Shown here: one piece after another, positions 39,746 through 42,817 of the stretch
How positions within the stretch are numbered: position 1 is the first letter of the stretch
Layout of the letters: every line of letters begins with the position of its first letter
Assembly (NCBI GenBank): GCA_964247055.1
Contig: OZ176053.1
Coordinates: 7,192,001 to 7,256,000, forward strand
DNA from: Paragordius varius
Taxonomy: Eukaryota > Animalia > Nematomorpha
Direction: 5' to 3'
Length of the DNA: 64,000 bases
Program-made: the position numbers and the translations under genes
Notes under the pieces: model-generated
Told to the model about the DNA's origin: nothing
What the model saw: the letters and a program-made list of their open reading frames with translations, nothing else
Database searches by the model: none

Positions 39746-40155
39746 TATTGAATTTTGGTTCAGCGGATTCCAATGTATTCAAATATATAAATATTAAAAA
39801 TTTTAAACACCCTTTTCATAAAATTCAATAAGGGTAAATTATAAAATATGACTTAAGAATGTGTTAGCCTAATACTTATATATATATTATTTATTAACAG
39901 ACTATTACTTCTATATATTAATCACATAATATACTTTTTAAACATCATGGATACGAACAAGCTGTTAAATCTAAATTCTAAGGAGAAATATATTTAATTA
40001 TGTCAAAATGTCAATATGCCTAAAAATATTAGAAGGCGTCAACAAAATTTGGTAAACATTATTTTTAAAACATATGCTTTTTTTCAAAAGATGATTTTGA
40101 TGTTGTGATAAAACACTTATTCCCAATATATATATATATATATATATTATATATA

Positions 40156-41788
40156 GTAGCGTATGCAGTAAAAGATTGTTAGTGCAAAATAAAAAACCCT
40201 TTTTATTAAAAACAGGAGGATAATATGGATAGTCTATACAAAATCAGGGGACAATCTTGGTATATGTAAAAATGCGCATGAGGTCTTTTTAAAATTGCGA
40301 TAAAAAATTGTAAAAATATTAGTAAAAACATAATTTCCCAGATTTCTTATAAATAAATGTTAAATTTTTATTTCATGGTAGAACATTCGTGATTTGAATT
40401 ATGGAACTTTATACAAATACAAATATACAAGATCTTTGAAACTGTATAAATACAAATTATACAAGATCTTTATTTAAATTATTACTTGCTTTTCTCGATT
40501 TATCTAAAACTGAATATGCGTGAGGTGAAAAATTAAAGGATTTTAAAAATTTGGGGTTTTTGTAATTAAAAATAAATTACAAAAGTTTACTTGTTAAATG
40601 CATTACTTTTTTGAGCGTTTATAATTAACCATAAAAAGCAGTACGAAAAATCACACAAGATTTGACAGAAGTTGCGTTACAGAGAAAACATTTATTTAAT
40701 GAAAATACACATAGAAATATATCAAATATTATTTAACATAAGAATATCACAATGCTTTAGCGGAAAACGCCATCTTTATAGTAAATAATAAACTTATTAT
40801 GGAAATTATTTTTTTAGCCTACCTTTGAATTTAGAAGTTATAGTACTTCCTATCAAGCAATAGGTGGCTTTATGAAACGAAAATTTAAAGGGGACAGTGT
40901 TTACCACGTGTCATAGTGTGAGACGCGTTTCGTCCTTGTTGTGGACTCATCAGCCACACATAATAAGCACGGGTAAACACTGTCGTTAAAAGTTTGTAAT
41001 ATCTGAGTATTTTAAGATTTAAAACCAATTATAGGTGAAAGAGAAAACGGAGAACTTAGGCCCGGAGTGGACAACCGATTGAACTTAGGTTAAGCCAATT
41101 AACATATCTCCTTTTTTATCCATTAGCCAGGATATGGCTTATATAATGAGAAAATCACTCCATAATATGTTTAATATTATTTAACAGGTTGCATTAGCAT
41201 TATTGTTCAAATATACCTATTTCACAGTAGTATTAATAAATAGATATTTATTCTAATGTATGGTTTTTATTGTTGCACATTTAAGAAAACATCACTGTTA
41301 AAAATATCAGTGTTTAAAATCTTTACGTGAATCTGTGTAAAAGACAAGGTGTCGGTTAAAAAATGATATAAGTAGTGTATTTAACAAGTAAACTTTTGTA
41401 ATTTATTTTTAACTACAAAAACCCCAAATTTTAAAAATCCTTTAATTTTTCACCTCACGCATATTTAGTTTTAAATAGATCGAGAAAAGCAAGTGATAAT
41501 TAAATAAAGATCTTGTATAATTTGTATTTGTATACAGTTCCATAATTCGAATCACGAATGTTCTGCCATGAAACAATTTAACATTTTTTATTGAAGATAT
41601 CTGGGAAATTATGTTACTAATATTTTTACAATATTTCATCGCAATTTCAAAAAAACCAAATGTCCTTTTTTACATATACCAAGATTGTACCCTGATTTTG
41701 TATACACTATCCATAATACTCCTGTTTTTAATAAAAAACTATTTTTTAGATTATTTTGCACTAACAATCTTTTACTGCATACGCTTTG
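40156..41788. mobile_element. Non-autonomous element with about 450-bp TIRs, flanked by (TA)n
   Basis: agcgtatgcagtaaaagattgttagtgcaaaat... (40156-about 40610) is the reverse complement of about 41365-41788; TA repeats on both sides. Confidence 0.85.
40893..40984 (-). ncRNA. Type I hammerhead ribozyme (Penelope/retrozyme-like, minimal palindromic stem III)
   Basis: Minus strand: GACAGUGUUUACC CGUG CUUAUUA U GUGUGG CUGAUGA GUCC ACAACAA GGAC GAAACGCGUC^UCACAC UAUGA CACG U GGUAAACACUGUC. All core nucleotides present; predicted cleavage between 40922 and 40921. Confidence 0.9.
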
Positions 41789-42817
41789 TATATATATAAA
41801 GCATGTATTAAGATGGTTTATCTGAGATTAAACAATATAATTAAAAAAATTAGATTGAGCTTCTCAGTATTTTTGTTATGTGATAACAATTTTTATTAAA
41901 TTAAATTATGATTTTAGGCAATTACCATAGTTGATATAACTGTGTTGAATGAGTCAATCTTAAAGCTACCGCAACTAGAGAATGATAGATTTTCTGCCAG
42001 AATATTTCAAAATATTGTCTGCACTATGTTATTATTATATAACTTAGAGTATGCAAAATCTGGGGTTAAAATGGTATTGAAATGTCACACCAAATTTAAT
42101 ATGATGATAATATTAAAAACAACTATATAATTCTAATCCGAATTTAAAGAAGTATAGGGGCATTTAATTATCTAGTATAGATAAATTGTTGAAAAAATGT
42201 TTGACACCGTATAATTTTTTACCAAAGAGCATTTAGACTTTATAACTTTTTGAATATAAAAATTTGTGGTAAATAAATCTCAAGCCTAAAAAAGTTTCCA
42301 TAACCCTAAAAGATAATTAAGGTAAGAAAATATTTCAATTTCCATATTTTATGGCTTAGGCGCATTATTCAAAAATATATTAAAAGAATGTAAAAATCCT
42401 CTTATCATAATTTTAGCAGCCAAGTTACAGTTTAAGATAAGGTCTATCAAAAACGTATTGGCATACAAATTTTCAATTATTTTTTTAAATTCAAATATAT
42501 AAGCAAATAAACACTAAAAATATTTATTTATTAATTAATATACATCTTAGATGAAACATGATGATCTGTAAATTTCTATAATTATATATATATGATAGAG
42601 ATACTGTGGACCGACATTTATATCAAAACTACTGAAATATGTATTTTATTAATATGCTAAATATTAAATAAAATTAGGAATGTCTCTTCCAACAAGCTCT
42701 GGACATAGAACAAAGCTTTGATAAAAAATATAAATGATATCAAAATTATAACAAAGAATATGTGAGATAGGGGCTATAAATAGCAGGAATGTTTACAATT
42801 TTTTATTAAATGATTCA

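What the first reader, a model, noticed from the sequence alone, without database searches (positions are those of the whole stretch)
40156..41788. Self-cleaving hammerhead ribozyme carried inside a long-TIR DNA-transposon-like element
Seen: a complete type I HHR (CUGAUGA, GUCC/GGAC stem II, GAAAC-GC-GUC cleavage site, 6-bp stem I extended through an internal loop into a perfect 13-bp helix) in the spacer between about 450-bp TIRs. No Penelope ORF or second HHR is nearby. Known: such motifs with palindromic ACGCGU stem III occur in Penelope elements and retrozymes and often act as dimers. Inference: a captured PLE fragment, or a TIR element that uses a ribozyme to cut its transcript between the two dsRNA-forming arms.
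Basis: partly seen in the sequence, partly recalled or inferred. Interest (0 to 1): 0.8.

Follow-up and report, generated by a model that had tools for sequence, protein, structure and literature searches.

The report
Hammerhead retroelement nested in a MITE
The hammerhead ribozyme is real, but it belongs to a small non-coding retroelement (an animal "retrozyme", of the Penelope-associated kind) that landed by chance inside an old Tc1/mariner-type inverted-repeat transposon, so this is two ordinary mobile elements nested, not a DNA transposon that uses a ribozyme.

Summary
A complete type I hammerhead lies on the minus strand at 40916-40959 (Rfam RF00163 31.4 bits, gathering score 34). Its cleavage site is 40922|40921. 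It caps a roughly 92-nt hairpin between two long inverted arms of about 430-470 bp.

The "one element" reading does not hold.
- The ribozyme sits in a 424-bp unit (40740-41163) flanked by its own target-site duplication: 14 bp perfect, 23 bp with 3 mismatches.
- Two paralogous copies of the inverted-repeat element have the uninterrupted site.
- None of the other copies of that element I held carries a hammerhead.
- The unit occurs at 75 or more other places without these arms. Those copies show 5' truncations, partial tandems, head-to-head inverted pairs and 9-26 bp duplications, which are the insertion hallmarks of Penelope-like elements.

The host element runs 40154-41788. It has CAGT...ACTG-type ends and TA duplications, so it is a non-autonomous Tc1/mariner element.

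Penelope-like elements (RT plus GIY-YIG) are abundant in this genome. The one family I could sample has no hammerhead and no similarity to the unit, so the mobilising partner is unidentified.

As a solo copy with a palindromic, loop-less helix III, this ribozyme is predicted to cleave poorly on its own.

This is a known kind (non-LTR retrozyme). Earlier notes of this scan reached the same reading for other copies in this genome.

The parts
40154..41788 (.). Host element: a non-autonomous Tc1/mariner-type long-TIR element (MITE or foldback-like). It is 1,635 bp now and was about 1,187 bp before the insertion. TA duplications lie at 40152-40153 and 41789-41790.
   Evidence: The family termini are CAGTAGCGTATGCAG... 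and ...CTGCATACGCTACTG, and 15 of 18 termini in other copies are flanked by TA. The window copy has slightly decayed ends (TAGTAGCG... and ...CGCTTTG). There are many genomic copies.
40154..40621 (+). Left inverted arm of the host element
   Evidence: Inverted-repeat pairs I1-I6. 82.6% identical to the right arm over 459 bp.
41357..41788 (-). Right inverted arm of the host element
40716..40738 (.). Left copy of the target-site duplication made by the hammerhead unit (perfect 14-nt core at 40725-40738)
   Evidence: Direct repeat D3. This stretch and its right-hand copy both align to a single stretch of the empty-site paralog L003.
40740..41163 (-). Inserted hammerhead-bearing non-coding retroelement unit, 424 bp, sense on the minus strand. 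The canonical family 5' end is at 41158. Bases 41159-41163 are 5 extra nt at the 5' junction. The 3' end is at 40740 (or 40739).
   Evidence: Absent from paralogs L003 and L005. At least 75 genomic matches without the TIRs, with recurrent ends at unit positions 6 and 423.
40893..40984 (-). Long hairpin with the hammerhead at its apex (helix I extended by a perfect 13-bp helix)
   Evidence: MFE -43.7 kcal/mol, z = -6.96. It is the most conserved part of the unit across 28 copies, 96.7% against 90.2% for the rest.
40916..40959 (-). Type I hammerhead ribozyme motif; predicted cleavage between 40922 and 40921
   Evidence: RF00163, 31.4 bits, full model length. Genome pattern counts 33 against 0 in the control.
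41164..41186 (.). Right copy of the target-site duplication (perfect 14-nt core at 41173-41186; a cluster of 3 mismatches at 41169-41172)

Best explanation
Two unrelated mobile elements are nested here.

(1) An old non-autonomous Tc1/mariner-type DNA transposon with long inverted arms inserted at a TA dinucleotide (40154-41788).

(2) Later, one monomer of a roughly 420-nt non-coding retroelement carrying a type I hammerhead inserted by reverse transcription into the short spacer between the arms. It duplicated 14-23 bp of target. The unit belongs to a dispersed family whose copies show the insertion signature of Penelope-like elements. It is best described as an animal non-LTR retrozyme, that is, a non-autonomous Penelope-type element.

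Likely mechanism. Source loci with two or more tandem units are transcribed. Hammerheads of neighbouring units pair through their palindromic helix III (ACGCGU) to form the active dimer, and they cut the multimer into unit-length RNAs. That RNA, or the multimer, is copied into new sites by the RT/GIY-YIG protein of a Penelope-like element.

The window copy has a single hammerhead whose helix III cannot close on its own. It is most likely a dead-end insertion that cleaves poorly or not at all unless another copy's transcript pairs with it. It has no role in the biology of the DNA transposon.

Shown here: the nesting, the duplications, the empty sites, the family architecture and the presence of Penelope-like elements. 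Inferred: transcription, dimer cleavage, and mobilisation by Penelope-like elements.
For: Empty site and duplication. Paralog L003 (contig 5 at 8.58 Mb) runs straight through the site, and one 23-bp stretch of it aligns to both 40716-40738 and 41164-41186. L005 is a second uninterrupted copy.

Independence. The 1,633-bp query splits into TIR-element matches (1-584, 1009-1630) and unit matches (about 583-1003) at different loci. The composite is unique. TIR-family loci L002-L005, L013, L016, L021 and L026-L029 have no hammerhead.

Family architecture.
- At least 75 unit matches.
- 5' truncations at unit positions 63 to 244.
- Recurrent 5' end at position 6 and 3' end at position 423.
- Tandem junction 423|6.
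- Head-to-head inverted arms, for example contig 2 at 14,440,477-14,441,393.
- Duplications of 9, 9, 13 and about 26 bp around solo copies or whole inverted pairs.

These are the published Penelope-like hallmarks: 5' truncation, partial tandems, an adjacent inverted 5'-truncated copy and a 30-40 bp tail (PMC8557442).

Penelope-like elements in this genome. A 787-aa ORF has RT motifs plus GIY-YIG. Its nearest Atlas clusters carry RVT_1 and GIY-YIG. There are at least 150 endonuclease-domain matches, many in the same head-to-head arrangement.

Constraint on the ribozyme. The hairpin is more conserved than the rest of the unit. It stays 93-97% identical in subfamilies whose flanks are only about 74% identical. 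A second hammerhead family in the genome changes all four helix II pairs compensatorily (GUCC/GGAC to UGCU/AGCA) and keeps helix III palindromic (ACGCGU to ACUAGU).

Literature.
- Animal type I hammerheads with 6-bp helix I, 4-bp helix II and a short palindromic helix III act as dimers (PMC4209133).
- They lie in 150-450 bp low-GC repeats called non-LTR retrozymes, with duplications longer than 4 bp (PMC7229834).
- They are proposed to be non-autonomous derivatives of Penelope-like elements (bioRxiv 10.64898/2026.07.22.740005).

Host element. TA flanks at 15 of 18 termini and CAGT termini.
Against: - The mobilising element is not identified. The one Penelope-like family I could sample (family A, five copies) has no Rfam-detectable hammerhead and no sequence similarity to the unit, including at its 3' end.
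- No intact-hammerhead copy lies within 5 kb of a detected Penelope-like ORF. This rests on comparing the coordinates by eye.
- The hammerhead scores just under Rfam's gathering threshold.
- There is no RNA evidence for transcription, cleavage or circles.
- This family forms mostly monomers, partial dimers and inverted pairs rather than the long tandem arrays typical of published retrozymes.
- The right-hand duplication carries a cluster of 3 mismatches, so its length is 14 or 23 bp depending on how the junction is read.
Confidence: 0.8

Rival explanations
1. The hammerhead is an integral, functional module of the long-TIR DNA transposon. It cuts the transposon's read-through transcript between the two arms that would form double-stranded RNA.
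For: The ribozyme lies nearly central between the two arms. The motif is intact.
Against: The unit has its own duplication, and two paralogs have the empty site. No other family copy in hand has a hammerhead. The composite occurs only once in 110 Mb. The unit is dispersed at 75 or more loci without TIRs.
Confidence: 0.02
2. The 424 bp is a solo pseudo-LTR, a severely 5'-truncated copy of an autonomous hammerhead-bearing Penelope-like element. It is not a member of a separate non-coding (retrozyme) family.
For: Penelope-like hammerheads sit in pseudo-LTRs, and most genomic motifs are truncated Penelope-like elements (PMC4209133). At least four divergent Penelope-like families exist here (31-100% identity classes), and only one was sampled. 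5' truncation is rampant.
Against: The unit has a recurrent, defined 5' end (position 6) and a 423|6 tandem junction, so about 420 nt is the complete repeating unit. No intact-hammerhead copy lies next to a Penelope-like ORF, and the apparent cases are nested insertions. The sampled Penelope-like family shares nothing with the unit.
Confidence: 0.12
3. The unit is moved by other machinery. It would be either a LINE-dependent SINE (like Schistosoma Sm-alpha) or a plant-style LTR retrozyme mobilised by Ty3/Gypsy elements.
For: One inverted hammerhead pair lies about 330 bp upstream of an intact 1,327-aa Ty3/Gypsy pol ORF (L072:4410-8393). Plant retrozymes use Gypsy machinery (PMC4918200).
Against: The unit has no poly(A) or A-rich 3' end, no LTRs and no 4-5 bp duplications. 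Its duplications are 9-26 bp and variable. Head-to-head inverted copies and arms slightly longer than one unit are Penelope-type, not LINE- or LTR-type (PMC8557442). The Gypsy adjacency is a single locus.
Confidence: 0.04
4. The hammerhead is a chance look-alike with no catalytic ability.
For: It scores 31.4 bits, below the 34-bit gathering score. Its helix III has no loop.
Against: All core nucleotides are present. Pattern counts are 33 and 171 against 0 in the controls. The hairpin is the most conserved part of the unit. Helix II and the helix III palindrome change compensatorily between the two genomic families. The loop-less palindromic helix III is the published norm for animal hammerheads that act as dimers (PMC4209133).
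Confidence: 0.02

Closest known systems
Animal non-LTR retrozymes (Cervera and de la Pena 2020, PMC7229834; Li, Clavereau and Pollet 2026 preprint, 10.64898/2026.07.22.740005)
   Same: A non-coding, low-GC unit of a few hundred nt with one type I hammerhead per unit. It has head-to-tail junctions, duplications longer than 4 bp, no LTR, PBS or PPT, and it co-occurs with Penelope-like elements.
   Different: Copies of this family are mostly monomers, partial dimers and inverted pairs rather than long tandem arrays. The unit (about 420 nt) is at the upper end of the published size range. No RNA or circRNA evidence is available here.
Hammerheads in pseudo-LTRs of Penelope-like elements (Cervera and de la Pena 2014, PMC4209133; Craig et al. 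2021, PMC8557442)
   Same: A short palindromic helix III that implies action as a dimer. The same insertion architecture: 5' truncation, partial tandem, an inverted 5'-truncated neighbour, a 30-40 bp tail and variable duplications.
   Different: No RT/GIY-YIG ORF is attached to this unit. Helices I and II are canonical (6 bp and 4 bp) rather than the min-HHR layout. The sampled autonomous Penelope-like family here carries no hammerhead.
Tc1/mariner MITEs and long-TIR or foldback derivatives
   Same: TA target duplication, CAGT...ACTG termini, no coding capacity, variable internal deletions, and copies nested in one another.
   Different: The arms are unusually long (about 430-470 bp of a 1.19-kb element). 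No autonomous partner with these termini was identified here.
Schistosoma Sm-alpha and newt satellite-2 hammerhead repeats
   Same: Short dispersed or tandem non-coding repeats with a canonical type I hammerhead that works best as a dimer.
   Different: No sequence similarity was tested. Sm-alpha is SINE-like, whereas this family shows Penelope-type inverted and tandem insertions.

Membership tests
Type I hammerhead ribozyme (Rfam RF00163) | Conserved catalytic core (CUGANGA ... GAAA ... cleavage triplet GUH) in the type I topology, with helix I open | tested here: met
   The full-length model alignment shows all core blocks. The sequence was read directly.
Type I hammerhead ribozyme (Rfam RF00163) | Score at or above Rfam's gathering threshold (34 bits) | tested here: not met
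   31.4 bits in the window. The best genomic copy scores 33.2 bits. The shortfall comes from the loop-less helix III and loop differences, not from the core.
Type I hammerhead ribozyme (Rfam RF00163) | Helices supported by compensatory change | tested here: inconclusive
   Within the family there is almost no variation, apart from G-U to A-U at the base of helix I. Between the two genomic families, helix II changes at all four pairs and helix III stays palindromic, but the homology of the two families was not established.
Type I hammerhead ribozyme (Rfam RF00163) | Self-cleavage activity | not testable with these tools
   Needs in vitro transcription of monomer and dimer constructs.
Animal non-LTR retrozyme | A short non-coding repeat unit (about 150-450 bp, low GC) with one type I hammerhead per unit | tested here: met
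   The unit is about 418-424 bp with one hammerhead, in a genome of about 26% GC. The region holds no ORF of 70 aa or more.
Animal non-LTR retrozyme | Head-to-tail (tandem) arrangement, so that two hammerheads can release a unit-length RNA | tested here: inconclusive
   The 423|6 tandem junction is seen in several loci, but usually as 1.1-1.2 units. The window copy is a single monomer. The second hammerhead family shows 3 tandem motifs spaced 444-445 nt apart.
Animal non-LTR retrozyme | Dispersed copies with target-site duplications longer than 4 bp, and no LTR, PBS or PPT | tested here: met
   Duplications of 9-26 bp. No terminal direct repeats were seen.
Animal non-LTR retrozyme | Expression as linear and circular RNAs of unit length | not testable with these tools
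Penelope-like element (autonomous) | An ORF with a telomerase-like RT and a GIY-YIG endonuclease | tested here: not met
   The unit is non-coding, and tblastn with a Penelope-like protein of this genome finds nothing in the window. Such ORFs do exist elsewhere in the genome.
Penelope-like element (non-autonomous, insertion type) | 5' truncation, partial tandems (pseudo-LTR), an adjacent inverted 5'-truncated copy, and variable duplication or tail | tested here: met
   compared with the description in PMC8557442.
Penelope-like element (non-autonomous, insertion type) | Sequence shared with an autonomous partner (3' end or pseudo-LTR) | tested here: inconclusive
   No similarity to family A.
Tc1/mariner superfamily (non-autonomous) | TA target-site duplication | tested here: met
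   15 of 18 termini in family copies, and both ends of the window copy, are flanked by TA.
Tc1/mariner superfamily (non-autonomous) | Terminal inverted repeats with Tc1-type CAGT termini | tested here: met
   CAGTAGCG... and ...CGCTACTG in family copies. That CAGT is typical of Tc1 comes from my own knowledge, not from a tool.
Tc1/mariner superfamily (non-autonomous) | A related autonomous copy with a DD(E/D) transposase and the same termini | not tested
   Not searched. Earlier scan notes report Tc1/mariner transposases and long-TIR foldback forms in this genome (s1-298867, s1-243090).

The most novel reading that the evidence does not exclude
The hammerhead repeats of this genome may be free-standing parasites of the Penelope-like machinery rather than deletion derivatives of a hammerhead-bearing Penelope-like element. 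Two things fit that reading: the autonomous family sampled has no ribozyme, and the copies are permuted and slightly longer than one unit (arms starting at unit positions 340-356, crossing the 423|6 junction and ending at 381-408). Such copies would be genomic footprints of reverse transcription on circular or multimeric ribozyme-processed RNA.
Probability: 0.2. Interest if true: 0.45.

Novelty: new member of a known kind. Interest (0 to 1): 0.17.

Why it matters
Mainly as a correction. A DNA transposon with a built-in ribozyme would have been new, and it is not what is here.

What remains is a clean, datable example of a hammerhead retrozyme insertion with a paralogous empty site. It lies in a very AT-rich animal genome that carries two hammerhead repeat families and many Penelope-like elements. 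Earlier scan notes take the animal for a horsehair worm; I did not check that.

The family could serve to test the current proposal that animal retrozymes are non-autonomous Penelope-like elements, because insertion junctions, tails and permuted copies are readable here.

Tried and rejected
- The default Rfam scan of the whole window found nothing, because the hammerhead is 2.6 bits under the threshold. The permissive scan found it.
- A global MAFFT alignment of the filled and empty copies did not open the large gap. I replaced it with flank BLAST and local alignment.
- I looked for an autonomous partner:
  - The GIY-YIG search led to a 787-aa Penelope-like ORF. Pfam did not recognise its RT.
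  - Its loci hold no hammerhead and no similarity to the unit.
  - An ORF next to an inverted hammerhead pair turned out to be a Ty3/Gypsy pol, with a fucosyltransferase gene on the other side. I rejected it as partner on the architecture.
- RNAcofold of the ribozyme with itself was uninformative about the dimer.
- None of the loci I held contains the second hammerhead family.
- I did not run the large protein searches, because the claim does not rest on them.
- I did not verify the organism.

Full report
**1. The observation**

- Hammerhead match. Rfam's default scan of the window returns nothing. A permissive scan of 40600-41350 aligns Hammerhead_1 (RF00163) end to end to 40959-40916 on the minus strand. 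The score is 31.4 bits and E = 9.3e-6, against a gathering score of 34.
- Core and helices. In RNA sense the motif has helix I of 6 bp (one G-U pair) and the core CUGAUGA. Helix II is GUCC/GGAC with a 7-nt loop, followed by GAAAC. Helix III is the palindrome ACGCGU, and the GUC cleavage triplet follows, cutting between 40922 and 40921.
- Helix III. In the Rfam alignment helix III has a loop of zero nucleotides, so it cannot close within one molecule.
- Hairpin. Helix I continues through an internal loop into a perfect 13-bp helix. The roughly 92-nt hairpin folds at -43.7 kcal/mol, z = -6.96.
- Inverted arms. They are real: 40154-40621 against 41357-41788, 82.6% identical over 459 bp.
- Neighbourhood. 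The window has no other hammerhead, no other copy of either repeat and no Penelope-like ORF.
- Chance. It is excluded. The exact core pattern occurs 33 times in the 110.6-Mb genome and 0 times for the reversed control. A looser pattern occurs 171 times against 0.

**2. The 1.6 kb is two elements, not one**

Searching the window's own genome with 40156-41788 splits the query.

- Positions 1-584 and 1009-1630 match many loci. This is the inverted-repeat element.
- Positions about 583-1003 match a different set of loci that lack the arms.
- Only the window itself matches end to end.

One paralog (contig 5, 8,580,581-8,581,707, L003) goes from position 584 straight to 1009.

Local alignment shows that a single 23-bp stretch of L003 aligns both to 40716-40738 and to 41164-41186. 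The window therefore carries a target-site duplication around an insert at 40740-41163. The duplication is perfect over 14 nt (40725-40738 = 41173-41186). It extends to 23 nt with a cluster of three mismatches in the right copy. L005 (contig 11) is a second uninterrupted copy.

None of the inverted-repeat loci in hand (L002-L005, L013, L016, L021, L026-L029) contains a hammerhead.

**3. The host element**

Aligning the termini of family copies shows that the true ends are CAGTAGCGTATGCAG... and ...CTGCATACGCTACTG. In 15 of 18 cases they are flanked by TA.

The window copy has decayed ends (TAGTAGCG at 40154, CGCTTTG ending at 41788), and both are still flanked by TA.

TA duplications with CAGT termini are the Tc1/mariner signature. 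That CAGT is typical of Tc1 comes from my own knowledge, not from a tool.

There is no ORF of 70 aa or more in or next to the element. Copies vary by internal deletion, down to about 170 bp, and nest in each other. It is a non-autonomous, long-TIR Tc1/mariner derivative.

Earlier notes of this scan describe several long-TIR or foldback Tc1/mariner elements in this genome.

**4. The inserted unit**

With the 424-bp insert as query in sense orientation, the genome gives at least 75 matches, with only 40 of 168 candidates scored.

- Ends. Copies recurrently begin at unit position 6 (window 41158) and end at 423. Many are 5'-truncated, starting at positions from 63 to 244. Many others stop at 373-408, that is, without the last 15-50 nt.
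- Arrangement. Several loci are head-to-head pairs. At contig 2, 14,440,477-14,441,393, two arms diverge from a central point. Each starts inside a preceding unit (positions 340 or 356), crosses a 423|6 junction and runs to 381 or 408.
- Duplications. They flank solo copies or whole inverted pairs and vary in length: 9, 9, 13 and about 26 bp.
- 3' end. The unit has no poly(A) and no LTR-like ends.

These features match the published description of Penelope-like insertions (PMC8557442): 5' truncation, partial tandems, an adjacent inverted 5'-truncated copy, a 30-40 bp tail and variable duplications.

**5. Constraint on the ribozyme**

- Across 28 copies the hairpin (unit positions 180-271) is 96.7% conserved, against 90.2% for the rest.
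- Subfamilies whose flanks are only about 74% identical keep the hairpin at 93-97%.
- A second, larger hammerhead family in the genome (about 130 motifs, in places three in tandem 444-445 nt apart) has helix II as UGCU/AGCA instead of GUCC/GGAC. Its helix III is ACUAGU instead of ACGCGU. All helix II pairs are exchanged compensatorily and the palindrome is kept.
- That is what is expected if the motif works as a dimer through an intermolecular helix III, as published for animal type I hammerheads (PMC4209133).
- The whole unit folds better than shuffles (z = -3.2), mostly because of this hairpin.

**6. Penelope-like elements in the genome**

- A GIY-YIG search found a 787-aa ORF (L071:3346-5709, minus strand). 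Its translation shows RT motifs, including YVDD, followed by a GIY-YIG module.
- Pfam did not recognise the RT. The protein's nearest Atlas clusters are animal proteins carrying RVT_1 and GIY-YIG (score 0.98).
- The genome holds at least 59 matches to the whole protein, in identity classes of 95-100%, 65%, 40% and 31%. It holds at least 150 matches to the endonuclease part, many as head-to-head pairs.
- The family I could sample (five copies) has no hammerhead at E up to 1. It shows no BLAST similarity to the unit and a different 3' UTR.
- Comparing the coordinates by eye, no intact-hammerhead copy lies within 5 kb of a Penelope-like ORF.
- The one apparent association (contig 4 at 5.137 Mb) looks like a hammerhead element inserted into a Penelope-like ORF.
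- One inverted pair sits beside a Ty3/Gypsy pol ORF. I take this as coincidence.

**7. Mechanism and status of this copy**

The most likely life cycle is inferred from the architecture here and from the literature (PMC7229834, PMC4209133, the 2026 preprint 10.64898/2026.07.22.740005).

1. Tandem source copies are transcribed.
2. Neighbouring hammerheads dimerise and cut.
3. Unit RNAs, possibly circularised by a host ligase, or multimers are reverse-transcribed at a nick made by a Penelope-like protein.

The window copy is one monomer with a single hammerhead. It should cleave poorly by itself and cannot yield a unit-length RNA from this locus. The mismatches in its duplication and its roughly 9% divergence from the nearest copies mark it as old. 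It has no demonstrable relation to the function of the DNA transposon around it.

**8. Comparison and novelty**

The thing works like, and fits the definition of, an animal non-LTR retrozyme, a non-autonomous Penelope-type element. Two features are untestable here: RNA circles and cleavage. Long tandem arrays are not typical of this family.

The kind is known, and nesting in a MITE is ordinary. Earlier follow-ups in this scan reached the same reading for other copies in this genome. Earlier notes take the genome for a horsehair worm; I did not verify this.

Noticed in passing
Genome-wide, e.g. G000:C4:11695915-11697058 and G000:C1:4310819-4311295 (not in the window): A second, larger hammerhead family of about 130 motifs: CUGAUGAG-UGCU-AACA-AGCA-CGAAAC-UAGUC. 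Helix II is exchanged compensatorily and helix III is the palindrome ACUAGU. In places it is tandem with a 444-446 nt period and forms inverted pairs.
   Followed up: partly
G000:C1:7513-7929, C2:7637-8059, C5:6718-7134, C7:7596-8087, C28:8281-8769, C3:14411727-14412215: Matches to the Penelope-type GIY-YIG endonuclease part (26-33% identity) lie about 7-8 kb from the ends of several contigs. This suggests a subtelomeric repeat that contains a Penelope-like element.
   Followed up: no
L071:3346-5709 (-) with L071:5841-6398 (+): An intact 787-aa Penelope-like ORF (RT plus GIY-YIG) abuts an inverted 5'-truncated copy, head to head. Pfam RVT_1 does not recognise the RT. The 3' UTRs of the five copies end at two alternative points about 32 nt apart.
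   Followed up: partly
L072:4410-8393 (-): An intact 1,327-aa Ty3/Gypsy pol ORF (protease, RT, RNase H, integrase) lies about 330 bp downstream of an inverted pair of hammerhead units. A fucosyltransferase gene, split over two ORFs, lies on the other side.
   Followed up: partly
G000:C4:5136634-5138652: A Penelope-like ORF appears to be interrupted by about 1 kb holding an inverted pair of second-family hammerheads. This would be a retrozyme nested in a Penelope-like element.
   Followed up: no
L002:2166-2337: A derivative of the same Tc1/mariner family of only about 172 bp, with both termini, sits 50 bp from a longer copy. The family spans about 0.17 to 1.2 kb.
   Followed up: no
L065:1921-4341 (+): An 806-aa uninterrupted ORF with Vps51/Exo84/Sec5-type N-terminal domains, probably a host gene, lies near the Penelope-like locus.
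   Followed up: no
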